DNA of 64,000 nt from IMGVR_UViG_3300020473_000010:124001-188000, one strand, 5' to 3'. Positions 1,743 through 63,218 are shown, numbered from the stretch's first letter. The notes: a model not told the origin generated them from the letters alone. Made by a program: numbers and translations.

Positions 1743-1768
1743 GATTTCTCCGAGTTGCTATTATTTAA

Positions 1769-1797: not shown

Positions 1798-1811
1798 CTA
1801 GTTTTTTCAAA

Positions 1812-42500: not shown

Positions 42501-42734
42501 ATCTTTGTTTTTCAAAAACTCTCTTACCGCGTAAGGACCAAATAAATCTGGATCTAATGTCCCAAAACGGTTTTCGAAATCCCTAAAGGATCCGATTGTA
42601 ACCGGGACAAAGGCAGGGCCATATTGTGACGATCCTACAATTCCAGCAGGGGTGCCAGTTGGCGATTGCTGTTGTACAGCTAGATCGATTTCCTGCTCGA
42701 AAAATCCCGGTGATTTAAATGTTTGTTCAGCCAT
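39597..42734 (-). CDS. tail sheath protein 1
   Basis: SPGFFEQEID, GPAFVP, PWFAPAGFNRG, FGQKTL, LDRVNVRRLL, PTRAIEFISIDF. Confidence 0.92.
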   Translation of the reverse strand: MAEQTFKSPGFFEQEIDLAVQQQSPTGTPAGIVGSSQYGPAFVPVTIGSFRDFENRFGTLDPDLFGPYAVREFLKNKDAVTFMRVLGAGANATESDITNTIEYGFVKNAGFKIGMSTGTNGANNNINVGHLLGVTNKECGGNVQFITAIHTVPANADAGFPIFTDNDSFPDVRENSSTPTTDDIGLIRAVLFTTTGSVFYAEDYNVDLSGTANHPANCTARYNLDTATGHMSKAFKLILCSKDTGFGGSSEELAKSKVFSASLDPEDVHYIGKVLNTDPKLFQREQHLLYLDLPVEDSVATVKTTVDKVAIVSGSLNNGANGDNFRELFGRFDTRYQAPKTSKFISQPFGKTEFNLFHFECLSDGEYANSKFKISIANLRASTDPNNKYGSFEVQLRNWSDTDQNPEILERYPLLTLDPNDDRFIGRVIGDKKVRYNFDAADEDERRLVISGKYPNRSLRIRVVINDAVYRDEVPHEALPFGFKGVPVLKTNPTGIYASSGISSERLAGASITDEHKGAILPPLPMRFKTSKSAISSTPTYVGAKGSKERIDSRLYWGVMFEKVGTDVLNANVTQKPNPLVKAYTKFHGIAKLDTLHDEAEADTFNNNKFSLAKVALYNELTTTGHITQITGSAAEHMLESAYLRNGVVDAKTYTVKDPVSDADRITLATLLNSSSVVFNRFTQFAKFNNIFHGGFDGLNILDGDISRLNDQSASTENASGGKAGNDITGGLGVSGSHDALLSGAGKHNNIVASYRKAIEIMTDPMTVNTNLLAVPNIRDPYITNHASNRTRDYSMAMYLMDVPSYDEDGNRLFIDASSAVPDVDQTAESLEGRVFDNNYTATYFPDVYITDPVNNRRVLVPPSIAALGALGYNDSVSYPWFAPAGFNRGGLEFVENVKVRLSSADRDTLYESRINPIATFPDGGFVIFGQKTLQMTKSALDRVNVRRLLLEVKRQIIEIANLVLFEQNTPETRQRFINLAAPRLALIQAQAGIESFKVIMDDTNNTEQDREENRLNGKIVVVPTRAIEFISIDFIITNAGVAFE

Positions 42735-47879: not shown

Positions 47880-47910
47880 TTAAAATGGGCGGCCACTTGG
47901 ACCGCCCATG
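47880..47910 (-). terminator. intrinsic terminator after major capsid gene
   Basis: ATGGGCGGTC-CAAGT-GGCCGCCCAT-TTT. Confidence 0.85.
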
Positions 47911-47933: not shown

Positions 47934-49898
47934 TTAGATGATGTTCAGATCGAGAACTGTAACAGTACCGTAGAAGTCAGAGCGAACCATCTTCTTACCA
48001 TATCGGGTCATGACACCCTTACGAGGAGTGAAGTCCTCAGGAGCAAAGATAGTAGGAGTAACAATCAGAGGCACATAAGGTGCATACACGTATCCTGTTT
48101 CAAGATAGCTTCCGCCCTTGTAACCGATAAGAATCTTGTTACGTGGGAAGTAAGGATCTTTGTAAACCGTGAAACGATTACTAAGAGAACCAACTTTTTC
48201 AGCACCGATTGTCATCGGGTTACCAACCTGTCCGTCACCGTCAAGGCTATAAACTGGCTTGTACATTACAGAAGATTCTAAGATCGTAGCAACATCAGGT
48301 CCGACAACGACGAAGTTGGCAGAACCACGAAGGGTTTTACGATGGATTGTATTAGCAGCATCGATGATGGTCTCTGCAAGAGTCTCATACCACTCGCGAA
48401 CTGTACCTGTGAAAGCAGGACCAGGGCGAAGGGAAGAACCACGTGCGATTGCAACACCGGTTTCCTTATTAACAAACTGACCTGGACTACGTGACCAATA
48501 AAGATTAGCACCGTTAGCTTGGGTCAAGAGATCATTCAAGATTTCACGATCAAGCTCTAGAGCGATTTGCTCAGAAAGGATTTGAGTAAGCTCAACTTCA
48601 GCATCTAAACTGTGATAAGCGTTCAAGTCCTGAGCAAGTTCTGGGGTCCAGCGAGCACGAAGCTTTCTGGTAGCCGCAGTAACACTGATTGACTCAATCT
48701 TAATATCAATCTCTGGAATAACAGGCTTGTTGCTAGCGCCAGCCAAAAGATTTGATTCAAACGAAGGAACTACAACAGAATCGCCGGAATCTCCTCCAAC
48801 ACGATCTGGACCAATTGCAAAACTAAGGTCAAGAATTGTGGCGCCAGTTGCGTCATTCATATTAGAAATATCAACGCTAGCGTTACCTCGGCAAACCGTA
48901 AGTACATAAGCATTTGTATCACCAATAGCAGCCAAAGGTGCTGCAGTCGGAAGACCAGAACCATCCCAAGTAACCAATTGGTTTAATCGACGAAGATTGA
49001 AAATGTTTAATCCACCTTGGAAATCTTCTCCCCAATCGACGAAATCATCATGCTCACCAGCGGCGCCGGTGGATGCATCAGGTGTAATAGCAATATCTTT
49101 AATCAGTGTTAAATCAGCGGCTCGAGACTGAGCATCGTTGAAATACGTAGTATTGGCTGGAATCATAGCAAAGAAAAGTTGCTTAAGAACAGCATCTTCA
49201 AGCCCTTTCTTAACTTGTGGATCAAATTGCATCCATTTTGCGTTAGAACCAGTAAACTGTGCTACAGCTGTGATGTGCGCATCGTCAGTAGCTTTCCAAG
49301 CGTTGGAATCATCCCAACATCCATATGCAATACCAGCTGTTTCGCCAGAAGTCAGTGCATTGAATGAGTGTCTTCTAGAAAATCCAGCACCAGCCAAGTC
49401 ATATTGACCACCAGTTGCTAAAGAACCAGATCGAACACCAGCACCACTTGGGTTATTATAAATAGATTGTCCACCATCATAAACTGCAGAAGCGGCGCCG
49501 GAACCAGCTTCTTGACCACCAACGTCATTGCCATATGTGTAATCAAGGTAGAAAAGCAATCCAGCAGGAAGGCTCATGGGTTGAATAGAAACAAGATCAT
49601 TTGCAACTAATCCACCGAATACACGACGAACGATTGGAAATGCAATGTTTTGGAAACCTCTGATATCACCGCTGGCTGATGGGCCAGTTCCGGTAGTACC
49701 TGAAGCACCTAAAGTATTTGCTTCGCGAAGAAGCTGAGCAGCCTGATTCTCTAAGAGAACAGACATATTTTCACGAGATTGACCTTCAAGACCACGAAGT
49801 AAACCAGTTCGGTTCCACTTCTCTGTAAGTCTTTGATGTTGAGCACCCATATTGCGTTGGCGAATGCCCTCGGTCAACTTATCTAAAGTAAATGACAT
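47934..49898 (-). CDS. major capsid protein (T4 gp23-like)
   Basis: LLENQ, FPIVRRVF, VSIQPM..PAGLLFYL, RKLRARWTPELAQDLNAYH, DAEVELT, EIDRE-like ELDREI, YAPYVPL, FTPRKGVMTRY. Confidence 0.95.
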   Translation of the reverse strand: MSFTLDKLTEGIRQRNMGAQHQRLTEKWNRTGLLRGLEGQSRENMSVLLENQAAQLLREANTLGASGTTGTGPSASGDIRGFQNIAFPIVRRVFGGLVANDLVSIQPMSLPAGLLFYLDYTYGNDVGGQEAGSGAASAVYDGGQSIYNNPSGAGVRSGSLATGGQYDLAGAGFSRRHSFNALTSGETAGIAYGCWDDSNAWKATDDAHITAVAQFTGSNAKWMQFDPQVKKGLEDAVLKQLFFAMIPANTTYFNDAQSRAADLTLIKDIAITPDASTGAAGEHDDFVDWGEDFQGGLNIFNLRRLNQLVTWDGSGLPTAAPLAAIGDTNAYVLTVCRGNASVDISNMNDATGATILDLSFAIGPDRVGGDSGDSVVVPSFESNLLAGASNKPVIPEIDIKIESISVTAATRKLRARWTPELAQDLNAYHSLDAEVELTQILSEQIALELDREILNDLLTQANGANLYWSRSPGQFVNKETGVAIARGSSLRPGPAFTGTVREWYETLAETIIDAANTIHRKTLRGSANFVVVGPDVATILESSVMYKPVYSLDGDGQVGNPMTIGAEKVGSLSNRFTVYKDPYFPRNKILIGYKGGSYLETGYVYAPYVPLIVTPTIFAPEDFTPRKGVMTRYGKKMVRSDFYGTVTVLDLNII

Positions 49899-49941: not shown

Positions 49942-51672
49942 TTACTTCTTATTAAGACCAGCCAACTTTGCCCATCGATTAAGCTCAACATTAGTTTTGG
50001 CAGGAGCACTGCTTCTTGTTGATGTGCTGGATCGACCAGACAAGACTCTGCTTTCGTTAAGCTTTCCGCTGCCCGAAGTGGAGCGGCGCTTACGAAGAGA
50101 ATCAGTAAGGCTCGTATATAGAAGTTTTGCTTCGCGTAACGTCTTGGCATTATCAAGGGCCTCAACAATGGCACGCTGTTGCTTTGTGTTTAAGTCATGC
50201 TGTTGCATCAATTTGTTTACATACAACAATTTAGCATTAAATAAATTTGATTCTTTCAATTCTTTTTGTGCAGAAGCAGCTTTTCTTTCAGCTAACTGAA
50301 TACGCTTTTGAATAGCGTTTCGTTTTTTAGATTCTGCAAGACGAAGTTGTTTTCTTCGGTTGGCTACATATCTTGCTCGACGGCGTCTTTCTTGGACGGC
50401 GCCTTTTTGAACTGAACCACCACCGAAGTTATCGGCAGATTTTAAAGCGTTTCCGCCTTTTTCAGCATTTGCATCAGAGCCAAGTTCTTCAGCCAAAGCG
50501 TTGATGAGAGTTTCTTCATCAACTTCAATCACTGATCCGCCATGATTTAAAGATGGATCAGCAGCTTTTGCTTCACTTTCAAACATTCTGCGTCTTCTAG
50601 AAGTAGGTCGACGGCTTCTGCGTCTTTTCGATTCACGGACTGGGCGTCGACGGTTACGACGCATTTTCATTAACTCTCTACGTAACGCAGCTTCGTTAAT
50701 TTCAACAACTTCACCTTCATCAGCGTCGTCGGCTTCATCAGCATCGCCTTCGTACATTTCATCGAGTTCAAGAGCTAATTCATCATCAGCTTCTTCATCT
50801 TCAAGTCCTTCTTCATCTTCAAGCCCTTCAAGATCTTCTTCTCCTTCTTCTTCTTCACCGCCAACTTGAACATCTAATCCAAGGGCAGCTCCCAAATCTT
50901 CAAGAGCAGAAGAAGCAGCGTCAACATCGACGTCGCCTTCTTCTTCTAGGCCTTCTTCTTCTTCACCTTCAAGACCTTCGTCTTCTAGGCCAAGATCATC
51001 GTCGCCGGCTTCCTCTTCGCCTTCGAAGAGCCACCAGGCATTTTCATTTAGCCGGCGGGTGGACCGGCGCGTTCTTCTTGACATATTATTCTCCTTAAGT
51101 ACGCTTAAAATTTTGCGGCCTAATTTAACTTCGGCCTTATTATTACTAGTTATGCATTCTTTTTGTAATTTTACCATTTCAGATAAAATTTTCTTTCGCT
51201 TTGCAACAGAGCGACATTCTCTTAATTGAGAAATCAATTGAGCAAAGCGGTTTTTCTTTTGGGTAAAACGTCTTGCGTTTAATCTTTTATGAGCTGTTTT
51301 GGTAGCAGACTCAACAGTAACGTTAATTGTAACATTTTTATCGTCATCTTCTGAATCTTCATCATCTGGTACGACTAACTCATCTTCAACAGGTAGAGCA
51401 TCAACAGATGGCGGAGGTAATGGAGATGGAATTTCTTCAGAATCTGGAAGTCCTTCTAATTCATCTTCAAGTGGGATAATTTCTTCACCTGAATCTCCTG
51501 GCTCATCCAGCATAGCGGCTTCCAATTCATCGTCGCCTGCTAATTCTGCTTCAATTAACCTTCGAATCCGAGGGGTAACTGCCTCAATGATTTTGTTTTT
51601 GGCGTTTTGCTCTGCAACTTCACGAAGTTTTTTTGCTTCAGCAATAGCCTCTTGATAAATATTTGAACCCAT
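49942..51672 (-). CDS. prohead core/scaffold protein
   Basis: very acidic; C-terminal LKESNLFNAKLLYVNKL...REAKLLY...RWAKLAG; immediately upstream of capsid. Confidence 0.8.
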   Translation of the reverse strand: MGSNIYQEAIAEAKKLREVAEQNAKNKIIEAVTPRIRRLIEAELAGDDELEAAMLDEPGDSGEEIIPLEDELEGLPDSEEIPSPLPPPSVDALPVEDELVVPDDEDSEDDDKNVTINVTVESATKTAHKRLNARRFTQKKNRFAQLISQLRECRSVAKRKKILSEMVKLQKECITSNNKAEVKLGRKILSVLKENNMSRRTRRSTRRLNENAWWLFEGEEEAGDDDLGLEDEGLEGEEEEGLEEEGDVDVDAASSALEDLGAALGLDVQVGGEEEEGEEDLEGLEDEEGLEDEEADDELALELDEMYEGDADEADDADEGEVVEINEAALRRELMKMRRNRRRPVRESKRRRSRRPTSRRRRMFESEAKAADPSLNHGGSVIEVDEETLINALAEELGSDANAEKGGNALKSADNFGGGSVQKGAVQERRRRARYVANRRKQLRLAESKKRNAIQKRIQLAERKAASAQKELKESNLFNAKLLYVNKLMQQHDLNTKQQRAIVEALDNAKTLREAKLLYTSLTDSLRKRRSTSGSGKLNESRVLSGRSSTSTRSSAPAKTNVELNRWAKLAGLNKK

Positions 51673-51727: not shown

Positions 51728-51955
51728 TTATGATCTCTTTCTTTGGGCGCGCCGTTTTCCTAAATGGCGTTTTTTTCTTTCTTTCATCCCTTTTGTTCTG
51801 GGATATTCTTTTTCTTTTAATTCTTTTAGAATACCACTTTTTTTCCATTTTCGCATGAATTTTTTTACAAGAATATTGTTATTTTCTTCAATTGATCTTT
51901 TATTCTGTTGTTTTGGATTTAATTTAACTCCAAAATTGTACTTGCCGGAACTCAT
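51728..51955 (-). CDS. rpsU: ribosomal protein bS21-like protein
   Basis: ILVKKFMRKWKKSGILKELKEKEY aligns with bS21 ALRRFKRxxxKxGxLxExRxREF; basic C-terminal helix. Confidence 0.7.
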   Translation of the reverse strand: MSSGKYNFGVKLNPKQQNKRSIEENNNILVKKFMRKWKKSGILKELKEKEYPRTKGMKERKKRHLGKRRAQRKRS

Positions 51956-52497
51956 AGTATCCTCTTAAGTGTTAGTCTGATCCATTCTCGCAAATCTTCC
52001 TCGGATTGCTTTTTTGCAAGATCGCTTAAATTAAATATGCGGCTTTCGTCTTCTTCTCCAGTTTCTGGTAAATAAGACCAACCTTTTTTATCTCCTGGGC
52101 TAAAACGTTTCCACCCATGGTGGTTTCGGGTTGTTCTGGCGCCTGTGGGAGGCTTATCTAATTCCCCTGAAGATATTTTGTGTAAACCCGGGATAGCTCC
52201 AATGCTTTTCGAAACACGTTCAGATAATTTTGTATTACCGGCGACATAATAAAAAGGATCATAATGATCTCCTTTATCGTAATCAAACATTTGAGGAGTT
52301 TTTTTCATTACAGCTTCGACAGACTCATCTGAGACTTCAACATCCGATATATCCTCATCCTCTTCTTCATATGGATATGTAGAAGCACCTAAAGTTTTAT
52401 GTACATGGAATTTAGGATCGGAACGACCATATCCCAGGTCGTTCCGTCCATCTAAGTGAGACTTAGGAAAATTACCACCGGCAAATTTGCTTGGCAT
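51952..52497 (-). CDS. hypothetical head-region protein
   Basis: 181 aa; ends LREWIRLTL. Confidence 0.7.
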   Translation of the reverse strand: MPSKFAGGNFPKSHLDGRNDLGYGRSDPKFHVHKTLGASTYPYEEEDEDISDVEVSDESVEAVMKKTPQMFDYDKGDHYDPFYYVAGNTKLSERVSKSIGAIPGLHKISSGELDKPPTGARTTRNHHGWKRFSPGDKKGWSYLPETGEEDESRIFNLSDLAKKQSEEDLREWIRLTLKRIL

Positions 52498-53774: not shown

Positions 53775-54317
53775 TTATCCTACGTCTGAGCCGGACAATA
53801 CAGGCATGGCATTGCGATGAATATTTGTTAATCCAACCATTAACGTACAGCCGGCTCTGTTGTTGTTGTCAATATATATTTCTGAACACTTTATTGGAAT
53901 TGCTTGAGTATAGGCGCCATTTTTAATATTCATTCTACTAGTCATGGTCGTAAGTCGGGTGGGAGTATGTATCCCGGGATCGCCGTCGGTGAAATTCGAA
54001 GAGATAGATGCCAAGGAAAAATCTGTGGCGGCGGTTTGCTTAGGTTTTGAAGCTGCTCCACTCGGAGTGAAAGAAATAAAGACATCCTGGGAGTGGGTAC
54101 AGGCGTTGGTTATCATAATCCATTGAGTTACATATGGAAACTGAATCCTTACTGGGTTAGAAGATGCTGGTATTTCATAAACAGCGGGATAACCTGCTAC
54201 TTGATACTCTGGTGCAAAATTTATATGAGGGGCAGGGTGGTTCATTGCTGCAGCGGTGGACGCGTTTGAGGTCGCCTGGTTCTTTTTGTCATAGTCTCTA
54301 TAATAATTATTACCCAT
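53775..54317 (-). CDS. hypothetical structural protein
   Basis: EYQVAGYP, IQFPYVTQWIMITN; coupled to protease stop. Confidence 0.7.
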   Translation of the reverse strand: MGNNYYRDYDKKNQATSNASTAAAMNHPAPHINFAPEYQVAGYPAVYEIPASSNPVRIQFPYVTQWIMITNACTHSQDVFISFTPSGAASKPKQTAATDFSLASISSNFTDGDPGIHTPTRLTTMTSRMNIKNGAYTQAIPIKCSEIYIDNNNRAGCTLMVGLTNIHRNAMPVLSGSDVG

Positions 54318-54931
54318 TATTCATTACTCCAATCTAGTATGTCATTAAATATTCTATCAACTCTATCTGATTTATTAAACACTTCTTTTAATTCTTTTTC
54401 AGAAATTTCTCTTCCTTCTTTCATCATAAATGCGCCTGGTGTTGAAGGTTCAGATACAAAGTCCCAACAAATTAGCTGAAAATCATCCTGCACTACTTGA
54501 TGATCACCTTCTCGTCTAGTTGAACCAACACCTCTAGAAGAAATGCCTAAAGTAACGCCAGAATCAACGAGAGACTTAAGTATTTTACCGCTAGGGGTAT
54601 CTAAAATCTCAACTGTACCGTAACATATATCTCCATCCATATAGGCCTCACGGACAATATGGGATGAATTTTTAAGTTCTACTACAGATGAATCCGGATG
54701 ATCTAATTCTCCAAGTGCCCTATTTTCGGCAATAAATTTTTGATAGTTTCGGACTTCTCTTTCTAAAATTTCTATAGGATATATTCTTCCATTCTGATTT
54801 AAAGTATTTGCTTTTTGGAGAATACCTTTCATTGTATATCTCCCTCCGGAAGAATCTCTTTCCTGAAGCATTTTTTCTCTATCAAATTCCCATGCGCTGA
54901 ATTCAGTTAATAATTTCATAGTCTTTTTCAT
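54317..54931 (-). CDS. prohead core protease (T4 gp21-like)
   Basis: NQNGRIYP, RALGELDHP, SHIV, LGISSRGVGS, WDFVSEPSTPGA. Confidence 0.95.
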   Translation of the reverse strand: MKKTMKLLTEFSAWEFDREKMLQERDSSGGRYTMKGILQKANTLNQNGRIYPIEILEREVRNYQKFIAENRALGELDHPDSSVVELKNSSHIVREAYMDGDICYGTVEILDTPSGKILKSLVDSGVTLGISSRGVGSTRREGDHQVVQDDFQLICWDFVSEPSTPGAFMMKEGREISEKELKEVFNKSDRVDRIFNDILDWSNE

Positions 54932-55779
54932 CGGTCGTCTCCCATAAGTTCGCGCTGAAGCTGGCAGACAGTTAAAAACTTTGATATGGTTTCATCGTTA
55001 ATTTCAGTAATGTTTAGGTCTGAAACTTCTTTTAGAACCGGTTCTATTTTACTTTTTACAAAATCATTATCACATGCTGCTTGAAATCTTGTTAATTCAT
55101 TGATGGTTTTGTCTTTAATAGATTTTAACGTTGATTCAAATCTGCTGGGGTTTTTATCCATGGAAAAAATATATTCTTTAATTAAAGTCTGTTGTTGATC
55201 ATTAAACCTAGTACCATATTTTTTATTGAACTTTTCTGTCATAATTTTAAGTACTAGTTTATCAATGGTTCCATCATGTTGTTCTTCTAAATTAATTAAG
55301 TTCTCTTCTCTCAAAAGCATTTCATGGACCTTGGTTTCGTATTCTACTATTCTACCAAAATCCCCTCGTTGGCGCCAGTCGTTTAACAAAGTTTGGACAG
55401 TGGCGAAATCTTTATATTCTGAAATGTGTCTTTTATAAAAATTTGGATCCTTAAGTTTATAATTTATTTCTTTGATAAGTTTAGATTTTTCTCTTTCCAA
55501 ACGGCGAGTATTGTGACTTCTCGCACCATATTTTGCCTCTTCGATTATCTTTGTTGCTAAAGATCCATCTTTGATTCTTGTTGTTACTAGTGCGTTGAAA
55601 AGTCTGTGCTCTTTATAAAGCTCTGTTCCTTGTTGGAAATATTTTTTTATTATCATTTTTGCAGTTGCAGCAGTTTGTTCATCATTGTTAACTAACGATT
55701 CCGAAATAACTCTTAACAATTGCTCATAGATAATCCCGACATTTCGTTTTTTATTGTGGGATCTTTTAGTCATTGTCAT
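54928..55779 (-). CDS. hypothetical protein between portal and protease
   Basis: HNKKRNVGIIYEQL; helical 283 aa. Confidence 0.75.
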   Translation of the reverse strand: MTMTKRSHNKKRNVGIIYEQLLRVISESLVNNDEQTAATAKMIIKKYFQQGTELYKEHRLFNALVTTRIKDGSLATKIIEEAKYGARSHNTRRLEREKSKLIKEINYKLKDPNFYKRHISEYKDFATVQTLLNDWRQRGDFGRIVEYETKVHEMLLREENLINLEEQHDGTIDKLVLKIMTEKFNKKYGTRFNDQQQTLIKEYIFSMDKNPSRFESTLKSIKDKTINELTRFQAACDNDFVKSKIEPVLKEVSDLNITEINDETISKFLTVCQLQRELMGDDR

Positions 55780-57793
55780 CCTCCAAATCTAGATCAAATT
55801 CCTCGTCTAAATCATAGTTTTCATTAATTATCTTTTTAATACCTAATTTTCCTTGCATTTTCTCTAACATGCCTTTCATTTCAAAGGACATAGCGGGGCG
55901 ATACCCAGAATATTCCTGTGTTTCTTCTTCTAGTCCTATAATATAATCAGCCAAAGATTGTTTTTTACCTTCTCCGAAAGAATTTCCGAATGGGTTTGAT
56001 AAGAAATCTTCATCATAAGGTTTTCGTAAAGTATCTTGAGAACGTCCAGCTTTTCCAGTTAATACCATTTTCTTAAGGTCTGGCATATGAGTAGAACCAG
56101 GTCCTGATCTCACTTTTCTATCACGCTTCTTACGAAGCGGGGTACCCCAAACATTCTTTTTAGATGGGGATGATGAAGGTTTTATACCATCTCCAAGTTC
56201 TCCTTGGATTTTTTCTAAATCTATTTCATCCAAATCTTCTTCATCAAAAGATTGTTCTTCATCTAATTCTAATAGTCCATCTGATTCTGTGGCCTGTATG
56301 GGATTTCCATCTAGAATTTGATCGTTTGAAGGAAGATCACCTGCGAATAATCCTCCGCCTTCATCTCCTCCAGCCTCATCCCCGCCACCTTCTTCTTCAG
56401 CTCCGGCAGCTTCTAGTTCTGTATCATTAAGTTTATCTTCTATTTTTTCTCTTTGCAATCTAAGAATTTCGTCTCTACTGAACCCAAAAATATTTTTATA
56501 AATCCAATTTCTACTAACCATTCCTTCGGGGGCGCCTCCTGCAATCTCAAATCTAGTCCGAATTAGTTCTAGTTTTTGTTGTTGCGCTAAACTAGAAGGG
56601 TTTGAAAGCTGTAATCCAAAATCTAGTAAATCTTCACTTTCAAATCCATGGGCAAAAAGGTGGATCATTGCAATCTTGTTTAATTCTGCTACAATTGTTT
56701 TTTGGATCCTAGATATTGTTCTAGAAAACCTAATATCTTCTTGTGCAAGAGTCGCTTTTGCACCGATATCTTCATCGTATCCTAAATACGCTTTTGGAAT
56801 TTTGAGAGCAGCAAATAATTTTTTCTGGACATATTCAACATCTTCAATAGCTGATGTGTTTTGTCCACCCGCTAGATTTTCTATTCTTGTCCCAGAATCT
56901 CCACCTCTAACCGGTATAAAATAATCTTCGTCGACCGATAAGGGATTATACCTTAAATCGACGTTTCCGGTACCCTTTTGTACGACCATGTTTTTCTTGA
57001 GGCTAGTTTTTGCTTGTTCTAAATAGTTTGCTACATCTTCCGGGGGCACGTTCCCCACATCAATATAGAATACACGCCGCTCAGGACTACGAATGACACG
57101 ATATACAAGCATTGCATCTTCAATAAGAATAAGTTGCCGCCAAATGCGTCGTGCAGACTCAAGTACAGAAGAACCGTAAGGAAGGAAAGCATCATTGCCA
57201 AGCAAACGAAAATGAGTAATTTGCCAATTTTCGAGAACTTGGTTTCCTTGGGTGATCCACCTAAAACGAACTGCAGAAGGGTCACTAGAATCATATCCTT
57301 CTTCTCTTTCCATTTCTGTAATTGGGATGGGGTAGGCATTAATTACTCCAAATTCAGGGTGAACATCGTTAAATAAGAAGAAATCACCGTATTTACACAA
57401 ATTTCTTATCCACATTACTAAATTAAAATTAATATTTAATGTATCATAAAAAAGAGTTTCTAAAAGTTCTCTTATTTTTCGATTATCGGAAGTTATATGA
57501 AGGCACCTACCTTCTACATCGGGGCTAACACACTCTTCGGCATATATGTCTAATGCAGAAGCAATTTCAGGAGTTGATTCCATTTCGCTAAAATCAGAAT
57601 ATCTAGCCATCCTATCAAAAGTTCCGTACGCAGACAAGGTCGAATTATATACATCACTATGGTGCTTCTTAAACAGTTCAACTGCAGAAGATGCATTTTT
57701 ATCTGATTTTGTGTAATTTCTGACCTTCCTTTTTATAGTTGGGCCGGACCTAAACAATTTTGTTAAGCGCCTAAATAGTGACTCATCAGCCAT
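55766..57793 (-). CDS. portal protein (T4 gp20-like)
   Basis: PEIASALDI, CKYGDFF, LIEDAMLVYRVIRSPERRVFYIDVGN, EDYFIPVRG, LFAALKIP, EDIRF. Confidence 0.95.
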   Translation of the reverse strand: MADESLFRRLTKLFRSGPTIKRKVRNYTKSDKNASSAVELFKKHHSDVYNSTLSAYGTFDRMARYSDFSEMESTPEIASALDIYAEECVSPDVEGRCLHITSDNRKIRELLETLFYDTLNINFNLVMWIRNLCKYGDFFLFNDVHPEFGVINAYPIPITEMEREEGYDSSDPSAVRFRWITQGNQVLENWQITHFRLLGNDAFLPYGSSVLESARRIWRQLILIEDAMLVYRVIRSPERRVFYIDVGNVPPEDVANYLEQAKTSLKKNMVVQKGTGNVDLRYNPLSVDEDYFIPVRGGDSGTRIENLAGGQNTSAIEDVEYVQKKLFAALKIPKAYLGYDEDIGAKATLAQEDIRFSRTISRIQKTIVAELNKIAMIHLFAHGFESEDLLDFGLQLSNPSSLAQQQKLELIRTRFEIAGGAPEGMVSRNWIYKNIFGFSRDEILRLQREKIEDKLNDTELEAAGAEEEGGGDEAGGDEGGGLFAGDLPSNDQILDGNPIQATESDGLLELDEEQSFDEEDLDEIDLEKIQGELGDGIKPSSSPSKKNVWGTPLRKKRDRKVRSGPGSTHMPDLKKMVLTGKAGRSQDTLRKPYDEDFLSNPFGNSFGEGKKQSLADYIIGLEEETQEYSGYRPAMSFEMKGMLEKMQGKLGIKKIINENYDLDEEFDLDLEDDND

Positions 57794-57832: not shown

Positions 57833-59416
57833 CTATTTTACTAACCAAGTAAAATCTGTATATGGGTTATTGCTGCCTGGCCAAGATTTTTTCTTGCCTT
57901 TAGTTGGTTCATTTGTTTGAATCGTTGCATCGGGGATTACGGTATCCTCTATTTTTGTTGAATTTACTGCAAATGCTGCAAGCATTGCCGCATTTAAATC
58001 AGTAGAGTGCTTATTAAGTTGGGGGGATGTGTCGTATAACCAAACCCCGATAGCTAAAGCCATAATTAGATCATCATTTTGACCTTTTTGGGCTTGGGCT
58101 TTACCGTTTTTCCATACAAACGTCTTTAATTCTTCGTATAAACGACTAGATTTTACCATCACTTGTTTTGTTCGTAAAACTTCTTCTAATTTTGTTAAAA
58201 TCTGGTTTCTTGTTTTTGCATTAGTTTGAAAACCTATCTTCCCTATGTCACCATTCCCATATAAGAAAGCAAATCGGTCTTTTTCTGATTGAAAATAGAG
58301 GTTTCTATAATCCATTTCATTTAATTTCATAACAACTGCATATCCATAAGAATTATTTTCAGGACAAATCAGAGCGTCATTATACCTTCGCCCAGCTTCA
58401 GCCAAAATTTGGGCAAATTTATCCGGGGGGAGTTTTCCTCTATATTCTGCTACAACTGCTGATGCGTCTGTGTCAATAATATGAAAAGTTGAATAATCTG
58501 AAGCATCTCCTCGTGAAACATCGGCTGAAATTATATATTTCTTGCCAGAATGCGGATAATCCCAAACCCAAACGCCCATATCTGGGCCCCATTTATCAAT
58601 AGGGTTGCGAATCCAGCCTCTTAAATATTCAATGTCTTCAACCTGCAGGAAAGTGTCGCCAGAAGCCGCAAAATCGCAGAGTAATTCTTGGGCAATCTGT
58701 TTTTGAGACATATTTTTAGTTTCTTCTTTAAACCACTGATCGTCCCTTTCTGGGTGGACATCCCATGGGAGCTTAATAGCATTAAAGATGTTTTCTCCAT
58801 CTTCAGCTTGTTTCCAGATATCGTAATATTGACCACCAACACCATTTGGAGTAGATAATACAATCGCTCTTCCCCCAGTTGATAGAGTGGGATACAAACC
58901 AGTCCATAAAGTATCAAAATTTCTTACAAACGCTGCTTCGTCTACAATTAACAATGTTAATGCTTCGGATCGACCAGCATCTTCAGAAGTTGGGATAGCC
59001 TTTATTGTTGACCCATTAGAAAATTCAAGAGCTTGCTTATTATTGTTGATAATTGCCGGCAATAATAGCCATTTTGGCATAGATTGAATAACAAATTTTA
59101 CTTTTCTAATAAAATTTTGTGCTACTGATAATTTTGTAGCAATAACTAGAATATTTTTATCTTTGTGGAATATACCAAGCCAGGCAGCGTATGCAGCTGT
59201 AATTGTCGATAAACCTAATTGTCTAGATTTTAATATTACATTAAACCTGTGTTCTACGAAAGCATCAACACAATCATTTTGAAACCCATATGTCTTAAAT
59301 GGAATGGCGCCTTTAATTGGATGTTGGATTTTAACATATCGATTAAAGAAATATTGTGGATTTTTACCACATTTTACTATTTCTTTTACTTGGCGCTGCT
59401 TTTGAGTTACTGACAT
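57833..59416 (-). CDS. terminase large subunit (gp17-like)
   Basis: KSRQLGLST, LIVDEAAF, LSTPNG, ADVSRG..DYS, ENNSYG, DDLIMA. Confidence 0.95.
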   Translation of the reverse strand: MSVTQKQRQVKEIVKCGKNPQYFFNRYVKIQHPIKGAIPFKTYGFQNDCVDAFVEHRFNVILKSRQLGLSTITAAYAAWLGIFHKDKNILVIATKLSVAQNFIRKVKFVIQSMPKWLLLPAIINNNKQALEFSNGSTIKAIPTSEDAGRSEALTLLIVDEAAFVRNFDTLWTGLYPTLSTGGRAIVLSTPNGVGGQYYDIWKQAEDGENIFNAIKLPWDVHPERDDQWFKEETKNMSQKQIAQELLCDFAASGDTFLQVEDIEYLRGWIRNPIDKWGPDMGVWVWDYPHSGKKYIISADVSRGDASDYSTFHIIDTDASAVVAEYRGKLPPDKFAQILAEAGRRYNDALICPENNSYGYAVVMKLNEMDYRNLYFQSEKDRFAFLYGNGDIGKIGFQTNAKTRNQILTKLEEVLRTKQVMVKSSRLYEELKTFVWKNGKAQAQKGQNDDLIMALAIGVWLYDTSPQLNKHSTDLNAAMLAAFAVNSTKIEDTVIPDATIQTNEPTKGKKKSWPGSNNPYTDFTWLVK

Positions 59417-59820: not shown

Positions 59821-60094
59821 TATTACTCTCCTGAGATTTAATATAATTATGTTGTTTAGAGGTGTTTTTCTCTGAATTATCGGGGCGCCATCCAGTGGCC
59901 CACTTTTCTTTGTTTGGTATTCGATACGTATCGTTACAGTCTAGACAACATCCAAAAGATTTAAAATTTGATATATCAGACATATCTCTAAAAGAAAACC
60001 CGCAAATTGGGCAATCTAACGGAGTTGGTGACCAATCTTTTGGGATAATTATATTAATATTGTCTATAGATTTGTATGTTTTTAGATCATCCAT
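59813..60094 (-). CDS. small zinc-finger protein
   Basis: CPICG...CCLDC...GWRP. Confidence 0.65.
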   Translation of the reverse strand: MDDLKTYKSIDNINIIIPKDWSPTPLDCPICGFSFRDMSDISNFKSFGCCLDCNDTYRIPNKEKWATGWRPDNSEKNTSKQHNYIKSQESNND

Positions 60095-63000
60095 ATACCA
60101 CCAAGCTGTCTGGGCCTTTTTTAGTTATTTCTATAACTTCATCGACAACATCTTTTACTACATCTACATGAGAAATAATTAGAATTTGTTTATAGAATTT
60201 CTTTAATCGGTGAAGGAGGCTAGTTACTGCTTCAACATTTTGAGGATCTAAAGTTCCAAATCCTTCATCGACTATAAACATGTCTGATTTATTAAGATGA
60301 GAAACATTGCTTAAAGCTACTCTCAAAGCTAATGATGAAACCATTTTTTCCATACCGCTAGCACACTCTATTGGGCGTCGAGAGTCTCCATAATTTAAAA
60401 ATACATCCGTGTTTCTTTCATCTACTTCCAATTCTATAGTAAATCCTGTAGTGTCTTGTAGAATAGTAGATAATTCAGCGTTAATAACCGGGATTTGTTT
60501 ACTCATAATGTATGTTGGAATCCCACGCCAGGAAGTTGCCTTAATTAAGAAATCATAAACCTTCCATTCAACTTGCAGTCTATCATATTCTGTTTGTTCC
60601 CGCCTTAATTGGGATATCATACTTCTAGAACGACCGGTTTGCTCGGCATTCGAGACAATTTCAGTGTTTATTTCGTTAATTTTCTCTGTAATTAACTTCA
60701 TTTGTCGGCGGATGTTCAACAATTCTTCATTTTCGTTGTTAGAGGCTCTTAATTTAAGTTCACTTAGTTCTTTTTTGTTGGATGCAATTTCTTGCTCCAA
60801 TATAGTCATCCTAGTATTTTTATCTGTAAGATCAGATTCAAGTCTAACCAAAGATAATCGATCTGAAGATTCTTTATTGAGCATAGAAGCATATTTGTCT
60901 ATTTTGTTTCTTAATCCTTCTGATTCTAATTCTTCTACATTAGATTCAGATGATAAGACTGACTCATTTAGGTCGTTAACTAGGTTTCTTTGATCCTCAA
61001 TTAGTGATTTGTTTTTATGAGAATCTTTAATAAATTTGCATGTTGGGAAATTATCTCCGCAGGGTACCTCAGCTAACAAGCGAACAGATTTTGTTTGCGA
61101 TGAGAGCAACCTTTTTTCTGAATTTAATCTTGCTTTCATTGTAGAGAGACTTAATTTTAACTCATCTAGATTTTTTAGCCTTCTTTTTAGTCCCTCAATT
61201 GGAAATTGTTGCTTTATGATTTCATATTTTTCGATCCTTTCTTCAATTAATTCTATAGATTCTTCAATTGTTAATACAGAATCACCTAAATCAGAATATT
61301 GACGTTGTTTAGTAATCAACGTTCTTTCTTTTGAGGAAATTAATCTAGGATCAACAAAAGAATCTGTATAATCTCTTTCAGCAATATCTTTTAACTCATT
61401 ATAATTGGATTTTTGTTGCTCGAGTTCAGCTTGGAGTTCTTCTCGGCGGTCAGCTTGGGATTTTATCTCTATTCTTTTATTCCTAATTTCTTGTACCCAG
61501 TCTTTAACCTGTAGTCTCTTAAGCATTACCTTAATTCCGGTCGCTTCTTCCTTTACTAAGGAATGAAGACTGTCGAAAACATCTAATCCTAAAAAATTAC
61601 TTAATATTCTTTTTCTTTCAGTTGATCCCTTTGAAATAAAAGCGTTCATATTTCCTTGGGCTGCAAACGACGTCATCATAAATTCATCTGAAGTACCTAT
61701 TAATTTTCGGATCGATTCTTCTGTTTCTCGGCGTTGTTCACCAGAAAGATCTTTTAAAATAGAGCCATCTTCATCGACTTCATAAAGGTTTAAATGTGTT
61801 ACAGTAGTTTCTGCTCTTTTTTTTGCTTTATGGCGGACAGTTTGCCTTTCTAATCTGTATAGTTTTCCATTGACTGAAAAGGTAACCTCGGCGGCGCAAA
61901 AAGGTTTTCTTGTATTAACTACATGAAGAAGAGAAGAAATACCTCTATCATTTGTGTTATATAGGCCATACATTAAAGTACCCGGAATACTTGATTTTCC
62001 GCAGCGGTTTTTACCAAATATTCCAATAATTCCGTTTAATTTTGTAAAATCGACAGAATTATCTGATCCATAACCAAATGTATTGTCAAAAGTCATACGC
62101 TGAACGGACCATGAATTTCCTTTTATTTCTGTACCGGAAGCTTTTGGCACAATATCATCCAATATTTTATCAACTTCTTCCCAAAATTCGTTAGATTCTG
62201 TTTCTTCGCCGTAATATTCTCGCAAAAGATTCTTATGGGTTTCAGATTTAGATAAATTTTCTATTCTTACCTTGTTTGCAGTGGCTTCGTCTATTCCAAG
62301 GTCATTAGAAGATTTTGGATCGATTTTAAAAACTACTTCATCTGCAGATTTTACTCTTCTTAATACTGTCGACAATTTTCTTTGTGTTTTTGGATCCAGT
62401 TGTTTATAAGACCGGATCCGGAAACGGGATCCATCCGGCCATTTGTCACATTCCTTTACTGTCGCTTGGATATTTTCTAGAAAGTCAACAGTAACAAAGG
62501 GATTATGATGTGTAACAGGGTAAAAATCAACAGACCAATCATTAACCCCACTAATATCCCAAAGTAAAAAGCCTTTTTCTCCAGATTCGCCATAATTTTG
62601 CTGAATCGTCGATCCACAATACCAAATCCTCCCATCTGCATCAATCTGCTGTCTTTTGTGGATATCACCTAACATTGTAAAGTCAAATGTTTTAAATAAA
62701 TCCATCTTACAATCACCGTCGAGCATCCAGTCAGTATCAGTATGAGAACCCCAGACAGCTCCGTGATAAAGGGCAATATTAATTTTTCCGGGAGTGGGCT
62801 TAATTGATGACCACCCATCTAGATCAAACGGGCTGAAAACACACCAATTAATATTTTCTCCTTCTGGATCCGGATAAACGGCGGATTTTCTATAGAGGTG
62901 TACATTTCTTAAATTTAATGCGCGCAAAATCGGTGAAATTGCGTCCTGGCGATCTGTATTAAGCACTAATCCATCATGATTTCCTAACATAACATGGACC

Positions 63001-63218
63001 GGTGCTATGGAAGACATTTCAGTAAACCACCAATTAAGACAGTCAATAAGTTCTGGGGATATCCCTTGAGTTTTTGAATGTACAATATCACCTGCGATGA
63101 CGAAACAATCTGGGTTTATATCTCGACACTGTTCGAACATGTCGGTAAATGAGCGTCTGTATTCTGCATGTCGAGTTAATCCTCTCCAATGCACGTCCGC
63201 AATGTGTACTATTTTCAT
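60087..63218 (-). CDS. fused Mre11/SbcD nuclease-Rad50/SbcC ATPase (gp47-gp46 fusion)
   Basis: ADVH, AGDIVH, GNHD, GDIH; Walker A GKNRCGKS, Q-loop AQG, coiled coil, signature SGMEK, IVDEGFGTLD, ISH. Confidence 0.92.
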   Translation of the reverse strand: MKIVHIADVHWRGLTRHAEYRRSFTDMFEQCRDINPDCFVIAGDIVHSKTQGISPELIDCLNWWFTEMSSIAPVHVMLGNHDGLVLNTDRQDAISPILRALNLRNVHLYRKSAVYPDPEGENINWCVFSPFDLDGWSSIKPTPGKINIALYHGAVWGSHTDTDWMLDGDCKMDLFKTFDFTMLGDIHKRQQIDADGRIWYCGSTIQQNYGESGEKGFLLWDISGVNDWSVDFYPVTHHNPFVTVDFLENIQATVKECDKWPDGSRFRIRSYKQLDPKTQRKLSTVLRRVKSADEVVFKIDPKSSNDLGIDEATANKVRIENLSKSETHKNLLREYYGEETESNEFWEEVDKILDDIVPKASGTEIKGNSWSVQRMTFDNTFGYGSDNSVDFTKLNGIIGIFGKNRCGKSSIPGTLMYGLYNTNDRGISSLLHVVNTRKPFCAAEVTFSVNGKLYRLERQTVRHKAKKRAETTVTHLNLYEVDEDGSILKDLSGEQRRETEESIRKLIGTSDEFMMTSFAAQGNMNAFISKGSTERKRILSNFLGLDVFDSLHSLVKEEATGIKVMLKRLQVKDWVQEIRNKRIEIKSQADRREELQAELEQQKSNYNELKDIAERDYTDSFVDPRLISSKERTLITKQRQYSDLGDSVLTIEESIELIEERIEKYEIIKQQFPIEGLKRRLKNLDELKLSLSTMKARLNSEKRLLSSQTKSVRLLAEVPCGDNFPTCKFIKDSHKNKSLIEDQRNLVNDLNESVLSSESNVEELESEGLRNKIDKYASMLNKESSDRLSLVRLESDLTDKNTRMTILEQEIASNKKELSELKLRASNNENEELLNIRRQMKLITEKINEINTEIVSNAEQTGRSRSMISQLRREQTEYDRLQVEWKVYDFLIKATSWRGIPTYIMSKQIPVINAELSTILQDTTGFTIELEVDERNTDVFLNYGDSRRPIECASGMEKMVSSLALRVALSNVSHLNKSDMFIVDEGFGTLDPQNVEAVTSLLHRLKKFYKQILIISHVDVVKDVVDEVIEITKKGPDSLVVYG

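What the first reader, a model, noticed from the sequence alone, without database searches (positions are those of the whole stretch)
51728..51955. Divergent bS21 in the head operon of a phage that uses strong SD sequences
Seen: a bS21-like ORF co-oriented and coupled with head genes just upstream of scaffold/capsid. It has an N-terminal insertion (PKQQNKRSIEE) and the usual Y-E-K-P-S/T motif replaced by YPRTKG. Most genes here carry AGGAG/GGAG SDs, and early promoters are TATAAT-type. Established: bS21 contacts the anti-SD platform; phage bS21 genes near capsid genes are described mainly from Bacteroidota phages, whose hosts largely lack SD use and have different promoters. Inference: either a non-Bacteroidota host, or a bS21 swap that retunes initiation toward SD-led late mRNAs.
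Basis: partly seen in the sequence, partly recalled or inferred. Interest (0 to 1): 0.6.

Follow-up and report, generated by a model that had tools for sequence, protein, structure and literature searches.

The report
Divergent phage bS21 in head operon
A marine 289-kb T4-like phage carries a real but strongly diverged copy of ribosomal protein bS21 inside its capsid-gene operon. Phage-borne bS21 is already well documented, so this is a new member of a known kind rather than a new phenomenon.

Summary
The 75-aa ORF at 51728-51955 (minus strand) is a genuine, selected gene and a diverged bS21 homologue.

**Homology.** Alone it misses the curated cut-offs (Pfam E=2.1; TIGR00030 20.7 bits against a 28.95 cut-off). 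Its orthologues reach the S21 models, and a family profile finds only bS21 chains in the PDB. The fold model's four best matches among 48,161 chains are bS21. A more distant phage carries a Pfam-positive bS21 at exactly the same slot, between the last small head gene and the scaffold and gp23 genes.

**Context.** Fourteen related contigs keep the gene in this slot. Eleven of the 12 starts printed, the window's included, read ATGA, the site of the upstream gene's TGA stop where this was checked. dN/dS is about 0.08. One strong terminator follows the capsid gene.

There is an 8-residue N-terminal insertion, and YPRTKG replaces FYEKPT. GGAG-type SDs precede 55-59% of genes genome-wide, against 1 of 26 in the nearest cultured relative, a Flavobacterium phage.

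**Host.** It is unidentified but probably SD-using and not Bacteroidota. The protein lacks the Bacteroidia Tyr54 signature.

**Function.** Ribosome incorporation and any retuning of initiation are inferred, not shown.

**Novelty.** Phage bS21, including copies next to capsid genes and in phages of SD-using hosts, is already published.

The parts
51728..51955 (-). bS21-like CDS, 75 aa. It has a long N-terminus with an 8-residue insertion, the loop YPRTKG, and a very basic C-terminal helix.
   Evidence: ORF. Homology. Fold. dN/dS about 0.08.
51952..51955 (-). ATGA start/stop overlap with the upstream gene, indicating translational coupling.
   Evidence: Read from the sequence. An ATGA start was printed in L001-L010 and L054, but not in L019 (ATGG) or L055 (TTG start). 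The upstream gene's end at that site was checked only in the window.
51960..51966 (-). SD-like AAGAGGA, 5 nt upstream of the ATG and lying inside the upstream gene.
   Evidence: GAGGA, GGGGA, GGAG, AGGAG or GGAAG at the same place in the relatives.
51952..52497 (-). Upstream 181-aa head-module ORF of unknown function. Its stop overlaps the bS21 start.
   Evidence: No Pfam or PHROG match. Conserved position in 8 of the 10 IMG/VR loci (no match in L008 and L010; 36-40% identity) and at 31-32% in L054 and L055; a gene of matching size sits there in L019.
49942..51672 (-). Scaffold-like 576-aa protein with highly charged blocks. It starts 55 nt downstream of the bS21 stop and has an AGGAG SD.
   Evidence: Syntenic in all relatives.
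47934..49898 (-). Major capsid protein, gp23 family, 654 aa.
   Evidence: PF07068, E=6e-76.
47885..47909 (-). Strong intrinsic terminator-like hairpin (10 pairs, 7 G-C, T-run) directly after the capsid gene. It is the first strong one downstream of the head genes.
   Evidence: Only weak 5-8-bp intragenic matches lie between 59400 and 47934 on this strand.
54317..54931 (-). Prohead core serine protease, gp21 family.
   Evidence: PF03420, E=1.4e-25.
55766..57793 (-). Portal protein, gp20 family.
   Evidence: PF07230, E=2e-76.
57833..59416 (-). Large terminase.
   Evidence: PF03237, E=1.4e-19.

Best explanation
The ORF encodes a phage-lineage orthologue of bacterial small-subunit ribosomal protein bS21.

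**Origin.** An ancestor of a clade of marine T4-like large phages captured the gene. It has been kept at one fixed slot of the head operon, between the last small head gene and the scaffold gene.

**Expression.** It is transcribed with the late head genes as one unit that ends at the terminator after gp23. It is translated by coupling to the upstream gene (ATGA overlap plus an internal SD). This gives bS21 output that scales with capsid-protein synthesis.

**Proposed action (inferred).** bS21 is known to be loosely bound, exchangeable and among the last proteins to assemble. The small, very basic phage protein is therefore expected to enter the bS21 site on the host 30S platform beside the 3' end of 16S rRNA. 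There it would fill vacant sites or displace the host copy. It would sustain or bias SD-dependent initiation at the time when the phage's GGAG-led late mRNAs must be translated in bulk.

**What has changed.** The conserved core and the basic C-terminal anchoring helix are kept. The N-terminal segment and the loop between helices 2 and 3 are remodelled. According to published structures, the N-terminal helix sits over the anti-SD where mRNA binds.

**Host.** It is most likely an SD-using marine bacterium outside Bacteroidota.

**Shown versus inferred.** Shown here: homology, fold, synteny, purifying selection, operon structure and SD use. Inferred: late timing, ribosome incorporation and the effect on initiation.
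For: **Homology**
- TIGR00030 E=2.8e-4.
- 12-13 of 18 orthologues hit the S21 HMMs.
- The family profile finds 31 proteins at E<=1e-3 among 1.84 billion. In an alignment of the window protein with 23 of them, 21 of the 24 members are PF01165-positive, best 1.3e-14.
- That wider profile hits 28 distinct PDB sequences, all bS21, best 2.5e-13.
- Relatives at 53-60% identity to the window protein carry precomputed PF01165.
- The nearest ESM-Atlas clusters after its own are viral S21 clusters.

**Fold**
- The AF2 model has pLDDT 84.
- The top four of 48,161 chains are bS21: Borrelia, E. coli (two) and F. johnsoniae, with Z 5.1-4.6, rmsd 2.8-3.1 A and 55-61 residues aligned.

**Orthology by synteny**
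- The same slot is occupied in 10 IMG/VR loci, the TMED69 contig, L054 and L055.
- The L055 copy carries an unmarked precomputed PF01165 hit and has a canonical-length N-terminus.

**Selection**
- Median dN/dS is 0.075. The cleanest pair gives dN 0.031 and dS 0.44.
- The gene is 50-67% identical across the IMG/VR loci, where neighbouring small head genes are mostly about 25-50%.

**Operon**
- ATGA coupling.
- A strong terminator only after gp23.

**SD use**
- 59% against 6-10% in controls, in all genome bins.
- Flavobacterium phage control: 1 of 26.

**Precedent**
- HTVC008M bS21 enters E. coli ribosomes (PMC6375957).
- Phage bS21 is co-transcribed with capsid genes late in infection (PMC9723584).
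- bS21 is exchangeable and assembles late (PMC6375957, PMC7797042).
Against: - No direct evidence of expression. Metatranscriptome contigs from the source sample did not cover the gene.
- No evidence of ribosome binding.
- The single sequence is below every curated HMM cut-off.
- A thin profile-profile comparison with four gammaproteobacterial bS21 sequences gave only 26% probability, E=7e-4.
- Foldseek against the PDB gave a single weak hit, E=4.1.
- The fixed position among prohead-core genes would also suit a virion-internal basic protein.
- HTVC008M bS21 made E. coli ribosomes nearly inactive in vitro, so the effect could be inhibitory rather than supportive.
- The host is unknown.
Confidence: 0.62

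Rival explanations
1. **Exapted structural protein.** The bS21 homologue has been recruited as a small basic prohead-core or DNA-associated internal protein. It might be packaged and even injected, and would no longer work on ribosomes during assembly.
For: - It sits in a fixed slot between the prohead protease and the scaffold, after five small uncharacterised head-module ORFs. In T4 this region encodes core and internal proteins (the T4 gene order is from general knowledge).
- It is extremely basic: 12 K/R among the last 21 residues.
- It is translationally coupled to a head-module gene.
- It carries an I-E-E tripeptide at residues 22-24 that fits the (L/I)xE protease consensus.
Against: - The (L/I)xE site is not conserved. 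Relatives read TDEE, SEEE or SNEE there.
- It lacks the MKxLRxYIRxxLLE leader shared by 12 other ORFs of this genome.
- The bS21 core positions F33, G41, K62 and R69 are invariant and E45 is nearly so.
- The whole bS21 fold is retained.
- Published phage bS21 genes also sit beside capsid genes without being virion proteins, as far as is known.
Confidence: 0.12
2. **Bacteroidota host with anti-SD unlocking.** The host is a Bacteroidota bacterium whose own bS21, bS18 and bS6 sequester the anti-SD. The phage bS21 lacks the sequestering Tyr54 and displaces the host copy. This frees the anti-SD so that SD-led phage mRNAs out-compete SD-less host mRNAs.
For: - The closest cultured capsid relatives include phages of Flavobacterium and Rhodothermus.
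- The position equivalent to Tyr54 is Arg68, and the C-terminus is strongly basic, unlike the Bacteroidia type.
- Published work shows that bS21-less Flavobacterium ribosomes gain SD recognition (PMC9976891 abstract).
- The published head-region bS21 phages infect Bacteroidetes.
Against: - SDs are present in every genome bin, including regions of small non-structural genes. Those genes must be translated before a late-operon product exists.
- The related Flavobacterium phage has essentially no SDs: 1 of 26.
- The Bacteroidota promoter motif TTG...TAnnTTTG is not enriched (0 observed against 1.3 expected), while a TTGTAAA-N16-TAtAAT class is.
- The phage tmRNA tag starts with Ala-Asn-Asn rather than the Gly-Glu typical of Bacteroidota. 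The comparison is from memory and is weak.
- The Bacteroidetes phages of Chen et al. keep Tyr54 or another aromatic residue.
Confidence: 0.06
3. **Translation-shutoff decoy.** The protein occupies the bS21 site but yields poorly active ribosomes for host mRNAs. It would act mainly as an inhibitor of host translation, or as a defence evader, rather than as a booster.
For: - E. coli ribosomes carrying HTVC008M bS21 had about 5% activity in vitro (PMC6375957).
- The parts of the protein that sit over the anti-SD are the remodelled ones.
Against: - It is made from the late head operon, when host shutoff is normally already complete and maximal translation capacity is needed.
- The in vitro result may reflect heterologous incompatibility, as its authors state.
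Confidence: 0.12
4. **Spurious ORF.** This is a chance lysine- and arginine-rich reading frame with no function.
For: The sequence is short and of low complexity, and single-sequence HMM scores are sub-threshold.
Against: - It is conserved at the same slot in at least 14 contigs.
- dN/dS is about 0.08.
- The retrieved subfamily includes at least 68 proteins, most of them representatives of 90%-identity clusters.
- The syntenic orthologue is Pfam-positive.
Confidence: 0.01

Closest known systems
bS21 of freshwater large phages predicted to infect Bacteroidetes (Chen et al. 2022, PMC9723584)
   Same: - Genomes of up to 331 kb.
- The bS21 gene lies inside the conserved TerL, portal, prohead-protease and capsid region.
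- Late co-transcription with structural genes was observed.
- The N-terminal part is diverged and the C-terminal part conserved.
   Different: - There the gene is on the opposite strand from the head genes. Here it is co-oriented and ATGA-coupled.
- Those proteins keep Tyr54 or another aromatic residue and resemble Bacteroidetes bS21. This one has Arg at that position, an 8-residue insertion and a PxT(K/R)G loop.
- Those phages have Bacteroidetes hosts. This phage is SD-rich.
bS21 of Pelagibacter phage HTVC008M and the roughly 1,300 aquatic viral bS21 genes (Mizuno et al. 2019, PMC6375957)
   Same: - A marine T4-like myovirus with a lytic lifestyle.
- The viral gene is under purifying selection.
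- Ribosome incorporation was shown experimentally for that homologue.
   Different: - HTVC008M bS21 is 54% identical to its host's protein and scores as a clear S21 (HHpred 99.8%).
- The present protein is far from any cellular bS21: 23% identity over 39 residues to a gammaproteobacterial one.
- tblastn against the phage collection found no HTVC008M match at E<=1.
RpsU3 of Vibrio phage 2.275.O (349 kb, MG592671.1)
   Same: - A cultured large marine phage of an SD-using host that carries a bS21.
- It is the only tblastn hit of the window protein among 50,697 phage records: E=0.1, 28% identity.
   Different: It is encoded next to IF-3 and an L7/L12-like gene in a non-structural region, not in the head operon.
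Cellular bS21 (RpsU; PF01165, TIGR00030)
   Same: - Similar size, about 70 aa.
- An N-terminal strand followed by helices.
- The conserved F, G, L, E core and a basic C-terminal helix.
- The fold model superposes on bS21 chains at 2.8-3.1 A.
   Different: - The N-terminus is extended by about 5 residues.
- There is an 8-residue insertion before helix 1.
- The loop FYEKP(S/T) is replaced by YPRTKG.
- The sequence scores below the curated HMM cut-offs.
bS21 paralogues of Francisella tularensis (PMC9578407, PMC13374519; abstracts only)
   Same: This is a working example of the idea that swapping the bS21 variant on the ribosome changes which mRNAs are translated (abstracts).
   Different: Those are cellular paralogues, not phage-encoded. 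No sequence relationship was tested here.

Membership tests
bS21 (Ribosomal_S21: PF01165, TIGR00030) | Sequence homology to the family, demonstrable by profile methods | tested here: met
   - The family profile retrieves PF01165-positive proteins at library-wide E<=1e-3.
- The wider profile hits 28 PDB bS21 sequences and nothing else, best 2.5e-13.
- Relatives at 53-60% identity carry PF01165.
- The syntenic orthologue in L055 carries an unmarked PF01165 hit, which the tool defines as E<=1e-5.
bS21 (Ribosomal_S21: PF01165, TIGR00030) | The protein on its own scores above the curated HMM cut-off. This is an operational annotation criterion, not a biological one. | tested here: not met
   - PF01165: 8.6 bits against a cut-off of 27.
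- TIGR00030: 20.7 bits against 28.95.
- A six-frame family scan of the genome reports nothing at E<=10.
- This is why it is filed as a divergent homologue, not as an equivalog.
bS21 (Ribosomal_S21: PF01165, TIGR00030) | bS21 fold: an N-terminal extended segment plus helices, ending in a long basic C-terminal helix | tested here: met
   - AF2 model with pLDDT 84 and helices at 22-40, 42-50 and 55-74.
- The four best of 48,161 chains are bS21, with Z 5.1-4.6 and rmsd 2.8-3.1 A.
- The absolute Z is modest, as expected for a 75-residue helical protein.
bS21 (Ribosomal_S21: PF01165, TIGR00030) | Conserved core residues: Phe of the RRF motif, Gly-(I/V)-L-x-E, and Lys/Arg of the C-terminal helix | tested here: met
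   F33, G41, K62 and R69 are invariant and E45 is nearly invariant, in an alignment with Ignavibacteria/Bacteroidota-type and gammaproteobacterial bS21.
bS21 (Ribosomal_S21: PF01165, TIGR00030) | Canonical loop (F/Y)(F/Y)EKP(S/T) | tested here: not met
   The loop is replaced by YPRTKG. Of 142 retrieved relatives, 68 combine the long N-terminus with the (S/T)(K/R)G-type loop. Intermediates reading ESKG or ETKG exist.
bS21 (Ribosomal_S21: PF01165, TIGR00030) | Stoichiometric component of the 30S platform next to the 16S rRNA 3' end | not testable with these tools
   This needs ribosome fractionation with mass spectrometry, or cryo-EM. It has been shown only for the HTVC008M homologue in E. coli.
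Bacteroidia-type anti-SD-sequestering bS21 | Signature Tyr54 (F. johnsoniae numbering) stacking on A1534 | tested here: not met
   The gapless register (offset 14) places Arg68 at that position. The structural alignment ranges 7-73 against 1-59 are consistent with this. The nearest aromatic or His residue is at position 64. The definition comes from PMC7797042.
Bacteroidia-type anti-SD-sequestering bS21 | C-terminal portion markedly less basic than in SD-using lineages | tested here: not met
   The last 21 residues hold 12 K/R and 1 acidic residue. The 64-aa Ignavibacteria/Bacteroidota-type proteins end in an acidic LLEEM-like tail.
Head-region bS21 phages of Chen et al. 2022 | bS21 gene embedded in the TerL, portal, protease and capsid region | tested here: met
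Head-region bS21 phages of Chen et al. 2022 | bS21 on the strand opposite to the structural genes | tested here: not met
   It is co-oriented and ATGA-coupled.
Head-region bS21 phages of Chen et al. 2022 | Bacteroidetes host | tested here: inconclusive
   The host was not identified. SD use and promoter motifs argue against Bacteroidota. Capsid relatives are mixed: Flavobacterium, Microcystis and Rhodothermus phages.
T4-type packaged internal proteins (capsid-targeting-sequence bearing) | Conserved N-terminal targeting leader ending in an (L/I)xE protease site | tested here: not met
   I-E-E is present in the window protein but is not conserved in relatives. The protein has no similarity to the MKxLRxYIRxxLLE leader family of this genome.

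The most novel reading that the evidence does not exclude
The bS21 homologue may not be merely a late-made ribosome supplement. One possibility is that it is a head-packaged protein delivered with the DNA. The other is that it is the key that unlocks the sequestered anti-SD of a Bacteroidota host. In either case a phage whose genes are almost all SD-led could reprogram start-site selection on host ribosomes from the first minutes of infection.
Probability: 0.07. Interest if true: 0.8.

Novelty: new member of a known kind. Interest (0 to 1): 0.3.

Why it matters
Phage-encoded bS21 is the commonest viral ribosomal protein, yet its function is still unproven.

This clade offers a clean natural series at a single locus. 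The series runs from a canonical, Pfam-positive copy to a strongly remodelled one with an N-terminal insertion and a new loop. All copies sit in SD-rich phages and all are hard-wired into the capsid operon.

That makes it a useful comparative set for asking which parts of bS21 a phage changes, and whether those changes alter SD-dependent initiation.

It also shows that annotation thresholds miss a populous viral bS21 subfamily. In addition, a GTDB species representative ('Methylococcaceae bacterium TMED69') contains a 306-kb phage contig.

Tried and rejected
**Searches that gave little or nothing**
- Single-sequence searches were weak. Pfam gave E=2.1, with a spurious phycobilisome-linker hit at 0.048.
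- tblastn against 50,697 phage records gave one hit at E=0.1.
- The intermediate P0033 gave no phage hit at 1e-3.
- Foldseek against the PDB gave one hit at E=4.1. Against BFVD it gave E 0.29-1.2; both named hits among the top four are viral S21.
- hhalign of the 18-member family against four gammaproteobacterial bS21 sequences gave only 26% probability. Both profiles are too thin.

**Expression**
- Three metatranscriptome runs from the probable source sample gave only tiny low-complexity matches in the scaffold gene and none on bS21. This is no verdict either way.

**Host inference failed**
- GroEL relatives are unnamed metagenomic proteins, or phage contigs binned as bacteria.
- The AdoHcy-hydrolase scan of species genomes found only the sister phage (74%) and a 55% Malonomonas hit.
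- Genomes reached through loci carry no taxonomy.
- The other TMED69 contigs have 37-40% GC and crude SD rates of 12-47%, which decides nothing.
- The named cellular bS21 proteins nearest to the profile are of the Ignavibacteria/Bacteroidota type. I reject this as evidence of origin, because that search only sees proteins sharing exact 5-residue words such as SGILK.

**Other items**
- The 75-aa ORF in the equivalent region of Flavobacterium phage immuto is acidic and unrelated.
- No T4-type TATAAATA late-promoter enrichment was found.
- No other ribosomal S1 or RF-1-type gene is present in the genome.
- No phylogeny was built, because the retrieved relatives carry no taxon labels.
- Complex prediction was not used. 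bS21 binds mainly rRNA, which that tool cannot model.

Full report
**What is there.**
- The window is bases 124001-188000 of a 288,697-bp IMG/VR virus record. It is estimated 96% complete and has 36% GC.
- The genome is a distant T4-like myovirus. Its gp23 capsid, gp20 portal, gp21 prohead protease and T4-type terminase are recognised by Pfam.
- The finding is a 75-aa ORF at 51728-51955 on the minus strand, the strand of 327 of the 349 ORFs called.
- Its ATG overlaps the TGA of the preceding 181-aa ORF, reading ATGA. A GAGG lies five bases upstream.
- The scaffold-like 576-aa gene starts 55 nt downstream, and the capsid gene follows.
- On this strand, the only strong terminator-like hairpins in the scanned stretch come after the capsid gene, the first directly after it at 47909-47885.
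- The ORF therefore lies inside the head transcription unit.

**Is it bS21? Sequence evidence.**
- Alone, the sequence is sub-threshold: PF01165 E=2.1, TIGR00030 E=2.8e-4 (20.7 bits, cut-off 28.95), PHROG 'ribosomal protein S21' E=0.029.
- Eighteen close homologues exist (51-77% identity), all metagenomic. Two are already named S21 by JGI.
- Scanned one by one, 12 of 18 hit PF01165 at E<=1 (best 4.4e-6) and 13 of 18 hit TIGR00030 at E<=0.01 (best 2.3e-7).
- A profile of the 18, run against 1.84 billion representatives, found 31 proteins at E<=1e-3.
- In an alignment of the window protein with 23 of these, 21 of the 24 members are PF01165-positive, best 1.3e-14.
- That wider profile hits 28 distinct PDB sequences, every one a bS21, best 2.5e-13.
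- A further word-indexed search found relatives at 53-60% identity to the window protein that carry precomputed PF01165.

**Is it bS21? Fold and synteny.**
- An AlphaFold model (pLDDT 84) was compared with 48,161 representative chains. Its four best matches are bS21 of Borrelia, E. coli (two) and Flavobacterium johnsoniae, with Z 5.1-4.6 and rmsd 2.8-3.1 A. Unrelated helical proteins follow at rmsd 7-14 A.
- The strongest argument is synteny. On a 139-kb contig, the capsid is 58%, the portal 62% and the protease 75% identical to the window's.
- On that contig the gene in the same slot is a 74-aa protein with an unmarked precomputed PF01165 hit and a canonical-length N-terminus.
- The window protein is thus the diverged orthologue of a recognisable bS21.

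**Reality and conservation.**
- Ten IMG/VR contigs, three contigs carrying the TMED69-type protein, and two further metagenomic contigs were examined. One of the three is the 305.8-kb contig deposited as 'Methylococcaceae bacterium TMED69'.
- Fourteen of the 15 contigs keep the slot: the bS21-like gene between the last small head gene and the scaffold gene. Most show the full order of portal, 283-aa ORF, protease, five small ORFs, bS21, scaffold and gp23. L008 and L010 keep bS21 before the scaffold but gave no match to the two preceding small ORFs. L021 is cut before the portal.
- An ATGA start was printed in 11 of the 13 contigs whose start was examined.
- Pairwise dN/dS has a median of 0.075. 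The least saturated pair gives dN 0.031 and dS 0.44.
- The protein is 50-67% identical across the IMG/VR loci, where the flanking small head proteins are mostly about 25-50%.

- The window protein was aligned with canonical bS21 from gammaproteobacterial genomes and with 64-aa Ignavibacteria/Bacteroidota-type proteins.
- It has about five extra N-terminal residues and an 8-residue insertion between the N-terminal strand and helix 1.
- From F33 onward it runs without gaps at an offset of 14.
- YPRTKG falls on canonical FYEKPT or YFTKPS.
- Of 142 retrieved relatives, 68 combine the long N-terminus with a P-x-T-(K/R)-G loop, and 41 are canonical KP(S/T) with a short N-terminus. Seven are intermediates, with an ESKG- or ETKG-type loop and a short N-terminus.
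- The position equivalent to Tyr54 of F. johnsoniae is Arg68. Tyr54 is the residue that stacks on A1534 and helps sequester the anti-SD in Bacteroidia (PMC7797042).
- The C-terminal 21 residues hold 12 Lys/Arg. This is the pattern of SD-using lineages, not of Bacteroidia.

**SD and promoters.**
- Gene starts were called crudely, using the first ATG of non-overlapping ORFs. On that basis 59% of 295 ORFs have GGAG, GAGG or AGGA at -18..-4, against 6-10% in four control windows. GGAG alone is 40% against 4%.
- The signal is present in every 20-kb bin (30-92%), not only in the structural half. It is also present in sister phages: 13 of 18 and 15 of 20 genes.
- The nearest cultured capsid relative is Flavobacterium phage immuto, at 43.5% identity. 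Using its deposited gene starts in the homologous region, it has 1 SD-like site in 26 genes.
- TATAAT alone and the Bacteroidota motif TAnnTTTG are at chance level.
- A bipartite TTG-N-TAnAAT pattern is enriched in intergenic DNA: 12 sites against 3.4 +/- 1.9. Nine of the 12 share TTGTAAA at -35.
- The phage also encodes a sigma-70-family protein with regions 1.2, 2 and 3. These promoters therefore need not report the host's sigma factor.

**Host.**
- It was not identified; the routes tried are listed under Tried and rejected.
- SD use in all gene classes, the promoter type and the non-Bacteroidia bS21 features make an SD-reading, non-Bacteroidota host the most economical reading. I hold it at roughly 85-90%.

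**How it most likely works.**
- Shown here: a selected bS21 orthologue, hard-wired by coupling into the head operon of an SD-rich phage.
- Established elsewhere: bS21 lies on the 30S platform against the SD-anti-SD helix. Its C-terminal helix anchors it to 16S rRNA, and its N-terminal helix lies over the anti-SD.
- Also established: bS21 assembles late and is exchangeable; a pelagiphage bS21 enters E. coli ribosomes; and other phage bS21 genes are co-transcribed with capsid genes late in infection (PMC9723584, PMC6375957, PMC7797042).
- Inferred: the protein loads onto host 30S subunits during the burst of capsid synthesis. It either tops up a substoichiometric protein or replaces the host copy. 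It thereby sustains or biases SD-dependent initiation on phage messages.
- The remodelled N-terminal region and loop are the candidate specificity determinants.
- The genome also carries a tmRNA, a peptide deformylase, GroEL and three tRNAs. This suggests a broader investment in translation and proteostasis.

**Rivals.**
- *A virion-internal basic protein.* The gene's address favours it. The lack of a conserved protease site or targeting leader, and the retained bS21 core, argue against it.
- *Anti-SD unlocking in a Bacteroidota host.* It is attractive because of the Arg-for-Tyr54 change. It is contradicted by SDs on non-late genes, by the SD-less Flavobacterium relative and by the promoter motifs.
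- *An inhibitory decoy.* It rests on the 5% activity of HTVC008M-bS21 ribosomes in vitro.

**Comparison and novelty.**
- Phage bS21 is the commonest virus-encoded ribosomal protein, found on about 1,310 viral genomes and contigs, mostly aquatic.
- Its placement in the head-gene region of large phages is published.
- A cultured 349-kb Vibrio phage has one beside IF-3.
- New here: a populous marine subfamily diverged past the curated thresholds, its co-oriented and translationally coupled placement, and its occurrence in a clearly SD-using phage clade.
- A canonical-to-remodelled series at one locus is also new.
- This is a new member of a known kind, and the interest is modest.

Noticed in passing
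L023:3-355 (genome 3-355, minus strand; outside the window): The phage encodes a full-length one-piece tmRNA (Rfam RF00023, 102 bits, E=3.7e-40). ARAGORN predicts the tag ANNNYFYDSERLAA. It lies at the very end of the contig.
   Followed up: partly
L024 and L025 (genome 31.9-45.3 kb), plus L023:6721-8562 and L023:18096-18497: Twelve ORFs begin with a shared leader of about 14 aa, MKxLR(K/Q/R)YIRxxLLE. It ends in an (L/I)xE motif that fits the T4 prohead-protease cleavage consensus. They may be a family of capsid-targeted (packaged or injected) proteins. The scaffold-like protein at window 49942-51672 starts with a YQEAIAE motif that I recall as resembling the T4 targeting sequence.
   Followed up: partly
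L019 and L036 (NHDW01000006.1, 305,838 bp): The GTDB/NCBI MAG 'Methylococcaceae bacterium TMED69' contains a 306-kb contig that is a sister phage of this genome. It has the same head operon, a bS21 at 77% identity, GroEL at 75% and AdoHcy hydrolase at 74%. This is either bin contamination or a host link.
   Followed up: partly
L027 and L045 (genome 92.6-96.8 kb): A cluster holds a peptide deformylase (132 bits), a sigma-70-family protein with regions 1.2, 2 and 3 but no detected region 4, and a GroEL. Elsewhere the genome encodes AdoHcy hydrolase, a short adenylosuccinate synthetase and an IMPDH/GMP-reductase-family protein.
   Followed up: partly
window 1759-1805, and about 11 other intergenic sites genome-wide: A promoter-like class TTGTAAA-N15-17-TA(T/A)AAT lies 10-50 nt upstream of minus-strand genes. 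It is enriched over shuffles: 12 against 3.4.
   Followed up: partly
window 60087-63218 (minus strand): A single 1043-aa ORF combines a calcineurin-like phosphoesterase (Mre11/gp47-like) N-terminus with an SMC/Rad50 (gp46-like) ATPase. It is a fused gp47-gp46, and the sister phages have the same fusion.
   Followed up: no
window 34964-39565 and 39597-42734 (minus strand): Two adjacent, very large sheath-like proteins of 1533 and 1045 aa both end in a phage sheath C-terminal domain.
   Followed up: no
L008:2161-2843 and L010:1847-2967: In two related contigs the portal gene match is split by an insert of about 0.7-1.1 kb, with a short duplicated overlap (residues 286-308). This suggests an intein, an intron or a homing-endonuclease insertion.
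   Followed up: no
L053:6445-7676 (Vibrio phage 2.275.O, MG592671.1): A cultured 349-kb Vibrio phage carries consecutive genes annotated IF-3, RpsU3 (bS21) and L7/L12/ClpS-like. This forms a small translation-factor cluster.
   Followed up: no
window 47934-49898 (minus strand): The gp23-family capsid protein is 654 aa. It matches the Pfam model and cultured relatives only in two pieces, covering 38-69% of its length. This implies a large lineage-specific insertion domain.
   Followed up: no
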